From positions 33,170,001 through 33,234,000 of the forward strand of contig NC_043015.1 in the NCBI RefSeq assembly GCF_006345805.1: a stretch of 64,000 nucleotides of DNA. Direction: 5' to 3'. Positions 42,301-64,000 of the stretch are shown here, piece by piece (position 1 is the stretch's first letter; every line of letters starts with the position of its first letter). The notes beneath the pieces were generated by a model. That model saw nothing but the letters and a program-made list of their open reading frames with translations. It had not been told where the DNA came from and searched no databases. This DNA comes from Octopus sinensis (lineage: Eukaryota). Position numbers and translations under genes: made by a program.

Positions 42301-43552
42301 TCCAGTCTGAGTGAAAAGTAAGCAGTGTTTTGAAACATGAAATTCATCATAATATATTTTGACAATGCGGAAATTCTATTTATCTAAGTATCATTACAAT
42401 CATCACATTTTTGCCAATGAGTTACAAGTTTGTTTGTTCTGGTAACATAAAAATCTGGAGTTCTGAAACTGATGAACTCTTTGAACGCACTTTCAGCATT
42501 GGTTTGATTTTTGAACTCCTTCTCTTGCAGGAAACCATCAAGGTGCTTGAATATGTGATAGTCAGTAGGTGAAAGGTCTGGGGAATAATCTGGGTGGGGA
42601 AGGACTTTGTAGCCAAGTTCCCTCAACTTCTGGAATGTCATTAGTGAAACATGTGGTTGAGCATTGTCATGAAGAATGATTGGTCCTCTTCTGTTGACCA
42701 GTCTGGGATGGAGGAAGAGCAGTTTTTTGTTCATTTTGGTAATTTTATGGCAATAGGTTTCTGCAGTAATAGTTTTTCCAGGTTTTAAGGAGTTATAGTG
42801 GATGAGTCCAGCAGTACACCACCAAACAGTCACCATAACCTTCTTTTTGAAGAGTTCGGGTTTAGGGAAAGTTTCCAGTGCTTCATTTTGGTCCAATCAC
42901 TGCGAAGAACATTTTTATTATTGCACAGAATCCACTTTTCATTGCAAGTTACAATACAGTCGAGAAATGGATGAGCCTGGTTACAGAGAAGAAGTGACAA
43001 GCAGATTTCATGTCTGTGCATTTTCTGATTTTCATTCAAATCGTGTGGTACCCCTTTGTTGAGATTTTTTGATTTTTCAATTGCACGCAAATGGTTGCAG
43101 GCAGTTTTCTAGCTAACCTGAAGATTTTTGCCAGTTCTTGAGTGGTTTTATGTGGATCTTTCTCAATGACGGTCTTTAATTGACCGTCATTGATGACAGA
43201 TGAACATCCACTCTGCTCACAGTCTTCAAGGCTCGGGTCTCCACTGCAAAATCATTTAAACCATTTTTGAGTGGAACACTCACTGGCCATTTCCTCACCA
43301 AACATTTCGTTGACATCGCAAGCAGTTTCAGCTGCTTTACGTCCTTTTTTTGAAGTTGATTAGCAAAATTGCTCAGATTATTATAACAATGGTGTAAAAA
43401 ATATGAATTTTAATTTATTGATGCTGTTGGGCAAGTCTATGTCTATTATCAGACAATTGCAAAAAAAATGTTTAAAAAAATTCAAAACTCTGCAAAAATC
43501 TGGTACAAATTCTGCATGGTTCAAAATGTTGCTTACTTTTTACTTAATCTGA
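42301..43552 (-). mobile_element. Near full-length mariner (DD34D) element, inactive
   Basis: About 1.25 kb, TA flanks, degenerate ~30-bp TIRs (tccagtctgagtgaaaagtaagcagtgtttt versus reverse complement tcagattaagtaaaaagtaagcaacatttt). Transposase pieces GVPHDL..IVTCNEKWI, ILHDNAQPH, HPDYSPDLSPTDYHIF are split by a frameshift, and the first catalytic D reads N. Confidence 0.93.
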
Positions 43553-57959: not shown

Positions 57960-59988
57960 AAAGTAAATTCTTTTAATTTTTTATTTCAAAGATAAGGTTT
58001 ACGAAATAATTTTAAGAAATAATTAATAAACAATATTCTTTACAAATATATGCAAAATAAAAATAATAAAATAAAAGGTTAAAAAAAAACATTCTATATT
58101 CAGATGACAAAAAAAAATTACCCCAAGAAATAAAAAAAGTTCTATATCCTTAAACAAATAATAATAAACAAAAACATCCCCGCCCCTCCCTCACAATGGA
58201 TGCTACAGTAAACGGGTTTTCTTCTTCCTCATTCACAGAAATATCGAGTAAAGGCAATGAACCCCATGGATATCAACCATGGAGATTGAACCTCTCAACT
58301 CTGATTGAAGGGAACAATGATGGTGGGGATTATTTCGGGGGGGTCAGCTAGCAGCCAGCCACCACAGATCTCAGCAGTAAATTAACAAGAGAAGAAAAAG
58401 TATGAGGTGTCAACATAAGAGAGGAGGAGGGCGAAGAGAGAGAGAGAGAGAGAAATGGTGAACAAATGATGAGACACAATGATGATGATGATGATGATGA
58501 AGTGAAAAAATGAGAAGTAACACTCCTCCCTATTTCTCTCACACTCTCTAAGAGCAACACTTCCCACCCACTCTGGTGGTAGAACTGGACATCCCAGTGG
58601 TGCTGGTGGCACACTGGGACATCACAAACTAGAAATGTGCACTTGAGGGCAGGGTGGAGAAAGAAAGGTGGCAGTGGTGGTTGAGAGAGATGGTGAGTGA
58701 GCAAGAGATGCGGTAGGGGTGGTGGCACACTTAGAATACGAAAACACTAAAGAAAGCCGAATGAAAGGAAAAAAAAAAAAAATCTTGGCAAATTAGGTGT
58801 GAAATGATTAGGGGGTGGGGATAGGAGGAGGAGCAGAAAAGGAAAGGTGTGTGTGAATACATACATACATATACACACTCACTTATTTATTTTGGTGAGT
58901 CTCTTGCTACTCGTGGGTACACAAGGTCTTCAAGTAAGTGTTTTTGAGTTGTAACTTGCCTGATGACCCCCCCCCCCTCCCGTGTACCCAAACATGAAAC
59001 TCAGGGTAGCAAGAGAGTGTCACGCATAAAATAAAATGTTATTAATCTCTTACTATGGTATCAAGTACTTTTTCTCCTGACAGTCAACACTAAGCGGTTG
59101 TGTGTGTGTGTTGTGAGAATCTACATCAAAGTGGGGAGTGGGGGGTGTGCTGAGAAACACAGGGGTGGGGAGATAATAGTTTGTTTTTTTTTAATTAAAA
59201 AAAAGAAGAGAGTTGGTAGTGTTGAAGTTAGAGGTGTAGCATTTATGACCCCCAAACATGTAGCGTATTAGTGCAGCAAACCCTTTCTGATTGTTTATTG
59301 TCATTAGGTGTTTTGAGATGATGTTGAGGAGGGGGGTGGGGTAGTGACAGTGTAATGATTAAATTTGGCTTTTTTTTTTATCAAATTTCCTTGTCCTCCT
59401 CCCCTCCTCCTCATCATCATCATGAAGGTTGTCTTAATTATTAAGCAGATGCAAGAAGAGGGTAGGAGAAAAGAGGAAACAGCTACAACAAGGCGCTTCC
59501 GATTCTGACTCTAAACTGCTGGCCCTTCGACCCCCGCCCACACTAACAATTGCCTGTGACGACCCCCACCTTCCATTCAAGTACTGGGGGTTGCAGTAAA
59601 AAGTAGCTGAACTGGACATTTTAAGTTGAGATAAAGGTGTTTTTTTTTATTTTCCTACAGACATGATAGCCCCACCCACAAGTACATAGGCTAGATTATC
59701 AAATATTCACATACACACACACATGTATATACATAGTACGTACATGTGTGCATGTATGTGCAAGAGTATTATATATATATATTTATACATGTATATATAT
59801 ATATATATATAGTGATAGAGAAATAGATAGAGAGATTTGTAGATCTGGTGGGTATTATTTTTATCAAACATGCCACACTCAAATTGTAATTTTAAATTCT
59901 TTCATTTTTAAAACTTTGTACCAGGTACAGGTAAGTTTAATTTCCCTTTTTTTAATTATATATTTCCCCTTTATTATATATATATGTG

Positions 59989-60031
<43 letters not shown>

Positions 60032-60406
60032 GTATATATATATATATATATATATTTATACATGTATATATATATATATATAGTGATAGAGAAATAGATA
60101 GAGAGATTTGTAGATCTGGTGGGTATTATTTTTATCAAACATGCCACACTCAAATTGTAATTTTAAATTCTTTCATTTTTAAAACTTTGTACCAGGTACA
60201 GGTAAGTTTAATTTCCCTTTTTTTAATTATATATTTCCCCTTTATTATATATATATGTGTGTGTGTGTCTATATATATATATATATATGTATGTATGTGT
60301 ATATATATATATATATATATGCATGTATATTGTTATTGAAAATTTTGCTTTGCTTTGCATGTTGTTTTCAATCTTTTCCAATTTAGATAATCATAAAAGA
60401 TGAATT
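57960..60406 (-). other. dlg1: Probable dlg1 3'UTR with AATAAA at 57980-57985
   Basis: SINE-free unique sequence following the stop, U-rich on the minus strand, with AATAAA just before SINE-rich DNA resumes (~57900). Other AATAAA hexamers occur more proximally, so the end is inferred. Confidence 0.5.
59770..60320. repeat. ~270-bp tandem duplication in the dlg1 3'UTR
   Basis: Unique core agtgatagag..gtgtcta occurs at 59811 and 60082 (offset 271); the copies appear to differ only in (TA)n lengths. Confidence 0.95.
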
Positions 60407-60513
60407 TCAGAGTTTTTCCTTGGCTGGCACCCATATTGTTGGTCCTGACTGGTCACGGATCACTTCTTTGACCTTTGCATAGATTTCATCAGCTGTGTCC
60501 CCTTGTACGACAG
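60407..60513 (-). CDS. dlg1: dlg1 last coding exon
   Basis: (S)[34 protein letters not shown], the typical DLG1 C-terminus ending WVPAKEKL. Acceptor ctctcccttctctttcag|, stop TGA ending at 60407. Confidence 0.97.
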
Positions 60514-61463: not shown

Positions 61464-61583
61464 AGGAGACGACGACTACTTACATGTGAAATAAGGAGAC
61501 GACGACTACTTACATGTGAAATAAGGAGACGATGACTACTTACATGTGAAATAAGGAGACGACGACTACTTACATGTGAAATA
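61464..61583 (-). repeat. 4 x 30-bp tandem repeat of the dlg1 exon/intron donor junction
   Basis: Minus-strand unit TATTTCACAT|GTAAGTAGTCGTCGTCTCCT; GT donors at 61573, 61543, 61513, 61483; one substitution at 61533. Confidence 0.97.
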
Positions 61584-61665
61584 CTCTCCAAATTCTTGTT
61601 CAAGTTTCATTGCTCTTTCATGAGTTTTTCTAGCCTGGTCCTCTGTGATCCTTTTATTCATCTCC
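61574..61665 (-). CDS. dlg1: dlg1 penultimate coding exon, 92 nt
   Basis: (M)[30 protein letters not shown]. Acceptor ttttcattgcag|, donor ACAT|gtaagt. Phase 2 to 1. Confidence 0.97.
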
Positions 61666-62688
61666 CTGCAATGAAAATAGACAGCATCTGTTGACTACAA
61701 CTGGGGGACTAGCGTCATGTAGATGGTTACATATAGGGAAGAGGAAGAGGAAGTAAATTCATGTAGAGATAACTAAGGACATGATGACATCCAACGAAAC
61801 AGACTCAACTGTTTATATCCAGTTTAACACAACTGCCTGGGTACCTGAGGTGACTTTAGCAGAGTCCACTCTGTTGCAAGTATTCAGGCTGGATTTCCAG
61901 TTTGAGGAGACCATTCTCCCTCCCTGCAGTCTTGAAGGCCCTGAAACAGGTCATGGGTGTTGCCATACCTACTGACTATGGAAAAAAACAAACTTCCTTT
62001 GGTTGTGAAGTGAAGCTCTCACATCCAACCTATTTTGTAAAAGTAATATTAAAATAACTTGGGTATGGCTGTGTGGTAAGAAGTTAGCTTCCCAACCACA
62101 TCATTTCGGGCTCAGTTCCACTGCATGGCACCTTGGGCATGTGTCTCCAATTATAGTCTTGGGCTGACCAAAGCTTTGTGAGTGGATTTGTTAGACAGAA
62201 ACTGAAAGAAGGCCATCGTATGTGTGCCTTTGACCTCCACCACAGCTTAACAAATGGTGTTTATGTCCCCATAACTTGGTTTGACAAAAGAGACTGATGG
62301 AATAAGTACCAAGCTTAAAAAAAAAAATTACTGGGGTTGATTCATTCAACTAAAGAATCTTCAGGTTGGTGACCCAGCATGGTAGCAATCTAATGACTGA
62401 TGCAAGTAAAAGACAAAAAAAAAAAAAGGGAAACCTCACATCTTTCACTGGATCCAGTCTTAATTTGTTAGACATTTGGTAGAAATTACACCAATTATAA
62501 GCTTATCAATTAAGCTCTATTAATTAACATGATTAGATGATGTAGTATTGTCTGTGGCAAGAATTGAACTGAGCGTCTCAGGCAAAGTGCCTTACTTTGC
62601 ATCTTTACTTCCACTTCACAGCTGAGTGATTAGCACAAAGAAGGACTTCTAATTCTCAAAGGAAAAAAAAAAAAGAAGTTCAACTTAC

Positions 62689-62798
62689 ATTATAGATTCC
62701 ACGGATTTGGGTTTGATGAAAACTGCGATTGGATATAATCCTGCTACTTGTAGCCGCTTGATTGCGTTACCACTGACGTCCAAAATGCAGTGTTTGCC
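62689..62798 (-). CDS. dlg1: dlg1 GUK exon, 110 nt
   Basis: [36 protein letters not shown](M). Acceptor ctttgttcag|, donor AT|gtaagt. Phase 0 to 2, in frame with neighbours. Confidence 0.97.
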
Positions 62799-63294
62799 CT
62801 GAACAAAGAACATTTTAAAACAGAAGATTAAACATAGTTTCATTTTAATCAAGCTGAAGATGTGTTTGTGTATGTGTAGGTAACTAATACTTAAATTTCA
62901 AGTTGTTCAACCATCTTCCCAAGTATTAAAGACAGGTAGTGTCTCCAATCTAAACATCAGACGTTTATGATTTTTAGTCAACAGAGCTCAAGTCTTTTTG
63001 TTATGTGTAGTCCTAAGGTCTGTCCACTGTTCAACAATGACTGGAGATATTTTGGTCATCTGACTCATGGATCTAAACCTTTGAAGGAGTCTATACAGTG
63101 ACTATTTTCATAAGATTAAGCATGGTCTTATTAAATTTAAAGACATAGGCACAACATTTTAATCATACCCATCTTATAATAAAATATGGTAACTGGGGTA
63201 TATCGGCAAACATCCAGTTGGGAAGAATAGGGTTGAGCAGAAATACGCATCATAGAAGGAAAAGTGTAAATAAATGTGGAGAGTGGGCGCCTAC

Positions 63295-63467
63295 CTTTTC
63301 TGCAACTTCCTTCACTGACGCAACACTAGTTCCGTAAAGATTGTCATTGTACTGGCCAGCTTCAATGAAAAGATGGTTTTGAATGTCTCGCTCCATTTGC
63401 TCTCGAGATGCAACAAAATGGTAGTCACGGGCATCAACTTCGTTCTCTCTCCGTTGTCGGGTAGTAT
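63295..63467 (-). CDS. dlg1: Discs large 1 (MAGUK) guanylate-kinase-domain exon, 173 nt
   Basis: Translates (H)[57 protein letters not shown], recognisable DLG GUK sequence. Acceptor cttacag|, donor AAG|gtaggc. Upstream exons lie beyond the window end. Confidence 0.97.
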
Positions 63468-64000
63468 CTGTAAGTACAGATGAGAAGATGGTAGTGAAAT
63501 AAGGGTGGCCTTGTACTAATAGACCTTCAGCAAAGAGTAACTGACTGATTAATATTATAATATCTGCTGTAAGTCTGAGATGGAAGAGATTATGTGTTTG
63601 TTATATGAGAATTAGAAAGAGTGTTTGAGGAAAATATCATCGGGTGGACAGTTTCACATGAATTGGCCAGCTGGAGGGGTGCCCTGGTTCCATTTGTCTG
63701 GTTTTTACAGATGGATGCCCTTCTTAATGCCAACCATTTTGGAGAGTGTACCAGGTGCTTCTATGTGACACTGGCGTGAGTTCTTTTACATGGCACCGTC
63801 ACAACAATATCTATATTATAACGCAGAAAGCCGCTTATTAATTAGGTATGTAACAATTACTAAAAGAAAGCAATTATCAAAGGCTTGACTGTCTGGAAAT
63901 CTTTAATAAATTCATGTTCTAAGAAATTTCCTATAATTTCTATTTCCAAACTTTATTGAATTTTTGAACTCCAATTTTTCACAAATTTAAATATTCATTG

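What the first reader, a model, noticed from the sequence alone, without database searches (positions are those of the whole stretch)
61464..61583. Quadruplicated 5' splice site: a tandem donor array that can truncate Dlg1
Seen: the last 10 nt of the penultimate coding exon plus 20 intronic nt are repeated 4 times, giving four identical ACAT|GTAAGTAG donors 30 nt apart; one unit carries a substitution, arguing against simple stutter. Any distal donor reads ...EFGEYFT-C-K-stop (TAG at 61568-61566), deleting the last 35 residues. Known: the strand after GUK folds back to complete the MAGUK SH3-GUK module, and small C-terminal truncations impair Drosophila Dlg. The stop would lie 22, 52 or 82 nt upstream of the final junction for donors 2, 3 and 4, straddling the 50-55 nt NMD boundary (a mammalian rule, untested in molluscs). 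Inference: a VNTR acting as a splice and dosage rheostat, with decoy U1 sites, on an essential synaptic/polarity scaffold.
Basis: partly seen in the sequence, partly recalled or inferred. Interest (0 to 1): 0.75.

Follow-up and report, generated by a model that had tools for sequence, protein, structure and literature searches.

The report
Repeated splice donor in octopus Dlg1
A 30-base stretch spanning the end of the second-to-last coding exon of the octopus Dlg1 gene has been copied four times in a row, leaving three spare splice signals in the intron. The same arrangement is known in several human genes and is most likely a young, largely silent accident, not a regulatory device.

Summary
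Window 61464-61583 (minus strand) holds exactly four head-to-tail copies of TATTTCACAT|GTAAGTAGTCGTCGTCTCCT. Each copy contains the last 10 nt of the penultimate coding exon of Octopus sinensis Dlg1 plus 20 intron nt, giving four identical donors 30 nt apart. One CpG-to-CpA change lies in unit 2.

Splicing from any downstream donor adds in-frame 30-nt blocks reading CK*SSSPYFT, so the last 35 residues would be lost.

The "rheostat" reading is not supported:
- A related octopod has a single unit at the same site, so the array is recent and not conserved.
- All 11 annotated O. sinensis isoforms, and all orthologues retrieved, carry the product of the first donor.
- The unit occurs nowhere else in the genome.
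- Minisatellites of this size are common in this genome.
- The arrangement is already described in human F7, IFI6, CBS, LMNB2 and PDGF, where only the first one to three donors are used.

Most likely this is a young, near-neutral minisatellite whose extra donors are silent or leaky pseudo-sites. Actual donor usage, copy-number polymorphism and confirmation from raw reads could not be tested here.

It is a new member of a known kind, of low to moderate interest.

The parts
61464..61583 (-). 30-nt x 4.0 minisatellite. The unit is TATTTCACAT|GTAAGTAGTCGTCGTCTCCT: 10 exon nt plus 20 intron nt.
   Evidence: TRF result. Sequence. Unique in the genome.
61574..61665 (-). Penultimate coding exon of Dlg1 (92 nt). 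It encodes (M)[30 protein letters not shown] and ends ACAT before the authentic donor GT at 61573-61572.
   Evidence: The spliced translation equals the annotated proteins.
61542..61543 (-). GT of pseudo-donor 2 (exon end would be 61544). Identical from -10 to +20 to the authentic donor, except for the unit 2 substitution at +11.
61512..61513 (-). GT of pseudo-donor 3 (exon end would be 61514).
61482..61483 (-). GT of pseudo-donor 4 (exon end would be 61484).
61566..61568 (-). First in-frame TAG met if any downstream donor is used (...YFT-C-K-stop). Further in-frame TAGs lie at 61538-61536 and 61508-61506.
61533..61533 (-). The only difference between units: A in unit 2 where the others have G (CpG to CpA).
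60407..60513 (-). Last coding exon, (S)[34 protein letters not shown] plus TGA. The acceptor is ttctctttcag|CTGTCG.
62689..62798 (-). Dlg1 GUK exon (GKHCILDV...SVESI-).
63295..63467 (-). Dlg1 GUK exon ([10 protein letters not shown]...VAEK).

Best explanation
This is a young, lineage-specific minisatellite. A 30-bp segment straddling the exon/intron boundary of the penultimate coding exon of Octopus sinensis Dlg1 was duplicated in tandem, probably by replication slippage or unequal exchange, and expanded to four units. One CpG transition has arisen since.

The first unit carries the authentic 5' splice site. Units 2 to 4 are intronic pseudo-donors of identical sequence.

The splicing machinery most likely uses the most upstream donor for the great majority of transcripts. 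That donor is the only one directly preceded by the purine-rich exon. This is the outcome documented for the same arrangement in human F7, LMNB2 and PDGF.

At most there is a minor leak to donor 2 or 3, as seen in CBS and IFI6. Such a leak would give transcripts with a premature TAG.

The array is therefore a near-neutral or slightly deleterious by-product of a repeat-rich genome, not an evolved regulator.

Shown: the anatomy, uniqueness in the genome, a single copy in a related octopod, the reading-frame consequences, and canonical annotated products.

Inferred: which donors are actually used, and neutrality.
For: - Exact 4.0-copy array.
- The unit is found only here in the 2.72 Gb assembly, and there is only one copy of the locus.
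- Logan genomic contigs of a related octopod (SRR11869390, SRR11869391, SRR11869384) have a 100% identical penultimate exon and about 80-85% identical intron. They span exon, intron and last exon with a single unit, TATTTCACAT|GTAAGTAGTAGTCATCTCCT.
- All 11 RefSeq isoforms of O. sinensis end ...EYFTSVVQGD...KEKL, as do the O. bimaculoides, O. vulgaris and Argonauta hians proteins and the decapod mRNA contigs. This shows strong constraint on the 35 residues that a downstream donor would delete.
- Precedent from PMC1557585. In F7, five to nine identical donors 37 bp apart are present and only the most upstream is used, even when pseudo-sites are improved to a consensus value of 91. In LMNB2 and PDGF only the authentic site is used. 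In IFI6 and CBS the authentic site plus two pseudo-sites are used.
- Base rate. About 10% of 264 kb sampled is tandem repeat. Three complex short-period minisatellites were found in a random 200 kb, covering 0.11% of bases. Occasional overlap with a donor is therefore expected by chance.
- Predicted RNA structure does not distinguish the four donors: unpaired probability is 0.30-0.44.
Against: - No RNA-seq junction counts could be obtained. Annotation pipelines favour frame-preserving junctions, so canonical protein models do not exclude substantial use of downstream donors.
- These donors are strong. CAT|GTAAGTAG matches 8 of 9 consensus positions and is contiguously complementary to U1 from +1 to +7 (established U1 pairing rules).
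[quoted passage not shown] This is the opposite prediction.
- CBS, whose 31-bp spacing is nearly the same, does use pseudo-sites.
- All the precedents are mammalian.
- Copy number in the assembly was not checked against reads.
Confidence: 0.68

Rival explanations
1. One reading: the array is a functional VNTR. Downstream donors compete appreciably with the authentic one. Copy number then sets the fraction of unproductive or truncated Dlg1 transcripts, some removed by NMD, so the array tunes Dlg1 dosage.
For: - Four identical, strong donors 30 nt apart.
- CBS and IFI6 minisatellites do yield use of two pseudo-sites.
- Identical consensus sites can be bound by several U1 snRNPs, and the intron-proximal site wins in vitro.
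Against: - The array is absent from a related octopod, so it is not a conserved regulatory feature.
- No truncated isoform is annotated.
- Polymorphism has not been shown.
- The deleted 35 residues are identical across all cephalopods retrieved, so a truncated protein is unlikely to be a selected product.
- Downstream-donor transcripts would lengthen the 3' UTR by only about 130-190 nt. NMD efficiency in molluscs is unknown.
Confidence: 0.1
2. Hypomorphic or null haplotype: the downstream-most donor dominates, following the intron-proximal rule for strong identical sites. The assembled haplotype would then be a damaged Dlg1 allele, carried heterozygously by the sequenced animal.
For: Hodson et al. 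2012. Also, the assembly is a single collapsed haplotype with no alternative copy of the locus.
Against: - The substitution in unit 2 implies that the array has persisted for some time.
- The F7-type natural arrays behave the opposite way.
- The gene models built on this very assembly give the canonical product.
Confidence: 0.07
3. Assembly artefact: the true genome has fewer units, and the long-read consensus over-expanded the repeat.
For: Raw reads were not available to check, and a related species has one unit.
Against: - Whole 30-nt units without indels, with one unit marked by a CpG transition, are not the usual long-read error pattern.
- There are no Ns in the window.
- Clean minisatellites of similar size are common elsewhere in the same assembly.
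Confidence: 0.07
4. Editing-rescued insertion: cephalopod A-to-I editing of the UAG in each unit (UAG to UIG, read as Trp) would turn use of a downstream donor into an in-frame 10-residue insertion (CKWSSSPYFT) instead of a truncation.
For: The unit is exactly 10 codons and stays in frame. UAG is a favoured ADAR context, and cephalopods edit neural mRNAs heavily (general knowledge, not tested here).
Against: There is no evidence of editing or of a convincing double-stranded structure; the predicted pairing across the array is weak and interrupted. The model also first requires use of a downstream donor. The array is not conserved.
Confidence: 0.02

Closest known systems
Human F7 intron 7 37-bp VNTR (Borensztajn et al. 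2006, PMC1557585)
   Same: - A minisatellite whose first monomer spans the exon/intron boundary.
- The authentic donor is followed by several pseudo-donors of identical sequence at a fixed spacing of about 30-37 nt.
- Use of most pseudo-sites would give a premature stop.
   Different: - The F7 unit holds 4 exon nt plus 33 intron nt, in 5-9 copies, and is proven polymorphic.
- The F7 donor is weak (TGG|gtgggt, consensus value 74).
- Exclusive use of the upstream site was shown experimentally in F7.
- Here the donor is strong (CAT|GTAAGTAG), the unit length is a multiple of three, and usage and polymorphism are untested. The host is an octopus.
Human IFI6 (6-16) and CBS intron 13 31-bp minisatellites, as summarised in PMC1557585
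   Same: - Reiterated donors are supplied by a minisatellite that starts at an exon/intron boundary.
- The CBS unit length (31 bp) is nearly the same as here.
- Both show that the first two pseudo-sites can be used alongside the authentic one.
   Different: They have many more copies (15-26). Use of the pseudo-sites is documented in humans and not here.
Human LMNB2 (100-bp) and PDGF (81-bp) boundary minisatellites (PMC1557585)
   Same: The boundary is duplicated in tandem, and only the authentic upstream donor is used.
   Different: The units are much longer and there are more copies.
Variable internal tandem repeats at exon-intron boundaries in human segmental duplications (De Grassi and Ciccarelli 2009, PMC2812944)
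   Same: Minisatellites averaging 30-bp units repeated about four times alter exon/intron structure and create alternative transcripts.
   Different: That was a survey of young primate paralogues. Here the host is a single-copy, highly conserved gene.
Artificial duplicated 5' splice sites (Hodson et al. 2012, PMC3413131)
   Same: Identical strong donors compete for one acceptor, and several U1 snRNPs can bind.
   Different: The constructs have two sites about 174 nt apart and were tested in vitro. The outcome was use of the downstream site, which is the opposite of the natural minisatellite cases.

Membership tests
Boundary-spanning minisatellite with reiterated 5' pseudo-sites (F7 IVS7 type) | Head-to-tail tandem array of a 10-100 bp unit | tested here: met
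   Period 30, 4.0 copies, 97% match, no indels.
Boundary-spanning minisatellite with reiterated 5' pseudo-sites (F7 IVS7 type) | The first unit contains the last exon bases and the authentic GT donor | tested here: met
   Splicing at 61574|61573 to 60513 reproduces the annotated C-terminus exactly. Unit 1 is 61583-61554.
Boundary-spanning minisatellite with reiterated 5' pseudo-sites (F7 IVS7 type) | [quoted passage not shown] | tested here: met
   CACAT|GTAAGTAG is present in all four units.
Boundary-spanning minisatellite with reiterated 5' pseudo-sites (F7 IVS7 type) | Only the most upstream donor (or the first two or three) is used in vivo | not testable with these tools
   No RNA-seq was accessible. 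Annotated isoforms are all canonical, which is consistent but not decisive.
Boundary-spanning minisatellite with reiterated 5' pseudo-sites (F7 IVS7 type) | Copy number varies between individuals (a VNTR in the strict sense) | not testable with these tools
   Only a between-species difference was seen: four units in O. sinensis against one in a related octopod. There is no second haplotype in the assembly.
Dlg subfamily of MAGUK scaffolds | L27, three PDZ, SH3 and GUK architecture, with the C-terminal strand completing the SH3-GUK unit | tested here: met
   The annotated proteins that contain the window's exons carry PF09058, PF00595, PF00018/PF07653 and PF00625. The C-terminal 159 aa align end to end with 3tvt, 3uat, 1kjw and 1jxm.
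Regulated unproductive splicing (alternative splicing coupled to NMD) | The alternative site is evolutionarily conserved | tested here: not met
   A related octopod has a single unit and hence no alternative donors.
Regulated unproductive splicing (alternative splicing coupled to NMD) | PTC-containing isoform is detectably produced and stabilised when NMD is blocked | not testable with these tools
   No transcript data.
Short-range tandem donors (GYNGYN type) | Alternative donors 3-12 nt apart, giving small in-frame changes | tested here: not met
   The spacing is 30 nt and each unit carries an in-frame TAG.

The most novel reading that the evidence does not exclude
The array is a polymorphic VNTR in Octopus sinensis or O. 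vulgaris populations. Its strong, identical donors leak in proportion to copy number. The leak either lowers Dlg1 dosage or produces a Dlg lacking the last GK helix and the SH3-completing strand. This would be a natural splice-site rheostat on a synaptic and polarity scaffold in a cephalopod, and a natural test of upstream-scanning versus intron-proximal rules for 5' splice-site choice outside mammals.
Probability: 0.1. Interest if true: 0.55.

Novelty: new member of a known kind. Interest (0 to 1): 0.25.

Why it matters
If the pseudo-donors are silent, this is an ordinary young minisatellite, and its main value is as an annotation caveat: a read aligned across this junction can be placed at four equivalent donors.

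It is also a ready-made natural experiment. The donors are identical and strong, sit 30 nt apart, and face a single acceptor in a highly constrained gene. Published mammalian work predicts opposite outcomes for this situation: oriented scanning to the first site (F7) versus preference for the intron-proximal site (Eperon laboratory). Junction counts from existing octopus RNA-seq would show which rule holds in a mollusc.

Only if the downstream donors are used in a copy-number-dependent way would the array bear on Dlg1 function.

Tried and rejected
- **Orthologous DNA from other cephalopods.** The gene models for O. bimaculoides, O. vulgaris and Argonauta hians span 300-700 kb, so no DNA was returned. 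The short O. bimaculoides model P0243 is not on record. The Sepia pharaonis model P0262 covers only the PDZ region.
- **Exact look-up of the genomic ORF MNKRIT...EYFTCK.** It is not on record.
- **Search with the last-exon stop-to-stop ORF.** It found one useful related octopod, P0268. Two further cephalopod contigs, L010 and L011, hold only about 190 nt upstream of the last exon and do not reach the boundary.
- **Species of the SRR11869390 runs.** It could not be identified.
- **RNA structure as a discriminator between donors.** It showed no clear difference.
- **Dispersed repeat or transposon origin of the unit.** Rejected, because the unit is unique to this locus.
- **An RNA gene in the intron.** Rejected, because there were no Rfam matches in the window.
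- **Redundancy from a second Dlg copy.** The only other near-identical match is a 1.2-kb gene fragment on C1 that lacks the last two exons.

Full report
**Observation**

Tandem Repeats Finder reports one array at 61464-61583 with period 30, 4.0 copies, 97% matches and no indels. On the minus strand the sequence runs ...GAATTTGGAGAG, then four copies of TATTTCACATGTAAGTAGTCGTCGTCTCCT, then ACGTTGTTTAAC.... Units 1, 3 and 4 are identical. Unit 2 has A for G at window 61533, a CpG-to-CpA transition. No partial fifth copy is present, and there is no microhomology at the array edges.

**The gene**

The window is G000:C19:33170001-33234000 of a 2.72 Gb assembly. A search with the spliced C-terminal peptide returned 100% identical RefSeq proteins named disks large homolog 1 or 2 of Octopus sinensis, on a 53,884,001-bp contig. 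That length equals the length of C19. Hits also came from O. bimaculoides, O. vulgaris and Argonauta hians.

Splicing minus-strand exons 63467-63295, 62798-62689, 61665-61574 and 60513-60407 gives exactly the annotated C-terminus ...[37 protein letters not shown]|[35 protein letters not shown]. So the array's first unit holds the last 10 nt of the 92-nt penultimate coding exon plus the authentic donor (CACAT|GTAAGTAG). Units 2 to 4 repeat that donor at 61544, 61514 and 61484.

One addition: the unit is exactly 10 codons long and stays in frame, so each extra unit would insert CK*SSSPYFT.

**Is it more than chance?**

The repeat itself clearly is. The 30-mer, allowing up to three mismatches, occurs four times in the whole genome, all inside the array, and a reversed control gave none. 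The locus has no second copy or haplotig.

The coincidence of a minisatellite with a splice donor is less remarkable. In the window plus a random 200-kb sample (20 chromosomes, 10 kb each), about 10% of bases are in tandem repeats. The random sample held three complex-sequence arrays with period 10-60, at least three copies and at least 90% match, covering 0.11% of bases. That extrapolates to tens of thousands of such arrays genome-wide. With an assumed 10^5 or so donor sites, roughly a hundred overlaps would be expected if placement were neutral. This is an order-of-magnitude estimate only.

**Evolutionary state**

A search with the stop-to-stop ORF around the last exon found a Logan genomic ORF at 79% identity. 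Its contigs come from SRA runs SRR11869390, SRR11869391 and SRR11869384 and are identical to each other. They span the penultimate exon (100% identical over 92 nt), the roughly 1-kb intron (about 80-85% identical) and the last exon.

At the boundary these contigs read GGAGAG TATTTCACAT|GTAAGTAGTAGTCATCTCCT ACATTGTTTAATTG, which is a single unit. All four O. sinensis units align to that one stretch.

Logan contigs are built from 31-mers (general knowledge of the method). A perfect 30-nt tandem repeat would make the graph branch there, not collapse silently. A contig passing straight through therefore argues for one copy in that species. The array is thus derived on the O. sinensis side and is not a conserved feature. 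The species behind those runs could not be identified. O. vulgaris and O. bimaculoides DNA could not be reached because their gene models span 335-700 kb.

**Constraint on what would be lost**

All 11 O. sinensis isoforms (X1-X11) end in the same 35 residues. So do the O. bimaculoides, O. vulgaris and Argonauta proteins and six decapod-like mRNA contigs.

The C-terminal 159 aa align end to end with solved SH3-GUK structures of Drosophila Dlg (3tvt), SAP97 (3uat) and PSD-95 (1kjw, 1jxm). GK-only constructs end at query residue 148. This fits the established view that the very last residues belong to the split SH3 fold.

In Drosophila, dlg18 (dlg1P20) removes the last 43 aa, disrupts the GUK domain and randomises spindle orientation. 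The allele dlg-sw removes the last 14 aa (PMC3770898).

**Mechanism and comparison with known systems**

The arrangement is a described one. Borensztajn et al. 2006 (PMC1557585) list genes with minisatellites whose first monomer spans an exon-intron boundary:
- F7 intron 7: 37 bp, 5-9 copies, only the most upstream donor used. Pseudo-sites are functional but silent, even when improved to a consensus value of 91.
- LMNB2 and PDGF: only the authentic site is used.
- IFI6 and CBS (CBS has a 31-bp unit): the authentic site plus the two nearest pseudo-sites are used.

De Grassi and Ciccarelli 2009 (PMC2812944) found that boundary repeats averaging 30 bp and four copies remodel human genes.

Against this, Hodson et al. 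[quoted passage not shown] The octopus donors are strong: 8 of 9 consensus positions, with contiguous U1 complementarity from +1 to +7. The outcome therefore cannot be deduced with certainty.

Predicted RNA structure does not distinguish the four sites, with unpaired probability 0.30-0.44. The only contextual difference is that donor 1 is directly preceded by the purine-rich exon (GAACAAGAATTTGGAGAG), while donors 2 to 4 are preceded by GTCGTCGTCTCCT.

**Verdict**

The most likely reading (about 0.68) is a young, near-neutral or mildly deleterious minisatellite. Its first donor does essentially all productive splicing, and its other donors are silent or weakly leaky pseudo-sites.

The rheostat model (about 0.1) has no support. 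The array is not conserved, polymorphism has not been shown and no truncated isoform is annotated. It is not excluded either, because no transcript data were accessible.

The other rivals are:
- a damaged haplotype in which the downstream donor dominates (about 0.07);
- an over-expanded assembly (about 0.07), which the unit-specific substitution and the clean 30-nt register argue against;
- rescue of the TAG by RNA editing (about 0.02).

This is a new member of a known kind. It is useful mainly as a natural test of 5' splice-site choice rules in a mollusc, and existing RNA-seq could settle the matter within hours.

Noticed in passing
window 59770-60320: A 271-bp unit is duplicated in tandem (2.0 copies, 97% match). 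It ends about 90 nt 3' of the Dlg1 stop codon, presumably inside the 3' UTR. It is TA-rich, and the copy nearest the stop contains an AATAAA at 60246-60241 on the minus strand. This is a second recent tandem duplication at the same gene end.
   Followed up: no
window 62633-63810; L033 1501-2684 (G000:C1:161420118-161421301): A 1,184-bp piece of Dlg1 holding the two GUK exons 63467-63295 and 62798-62689 plus the intron between them is present a second time. The copy is 99.2% identical, lies on chromosome C1 and sits in unrelated flanking sequence. It has one coding difference (CGA to CAA, Arg to Gln). It lacks the penultimate exon, the array and the last exon. It is either a very recent gene-fragment duplication or an assembly chimera.
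   Followed up: partly
window 63809-64000 and 62053-62428: Two dispersed repeat families lie in Dlg1 introns. One is a roughly 190-nt element with 88-90% identical copies on many chromosomes. The other is a roughly 360-nt element with 75-79% identical copies. The first one lies next to one end of the fragment duplicated on C1.
   Followed up: no
window 42384-42896 (minus strand): A 170-aa open frame matches the mariner-type transposase DDE domain (PF01359, E = 1.3e-18). It is a transposon remnant in the gene-poor 60 kb downstream of Dlg1. No other convincing coding exon was seen in 1-60400.
   Followed up: partly
L013 3091-3458 and 7022-7769; L020 3265-3999 and 8908-9699; L023 4894-5443: A 184-188-bp tandemly repeated family appears in 3 of 20 random 10-kb samples of the genome, with 2-4 copies per array at 91-95% match. 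It dominates the minisatellite fraction.
   Followed up: no
L009 (starts at L007 position 615): In one of the three runs of the related octopod, the contig begins inside the single 30-nt unit, just after the donor. The position does not fit what a two-copy allele would produce in a 31-mer graph, so it is probably a coverage break or a SNP. It was not resolved.
   Followed up: no
window 1-64000: No Rfam family reaches its gathering score anywhere in the window, and the window contains no Ns.
   Followed up: yes
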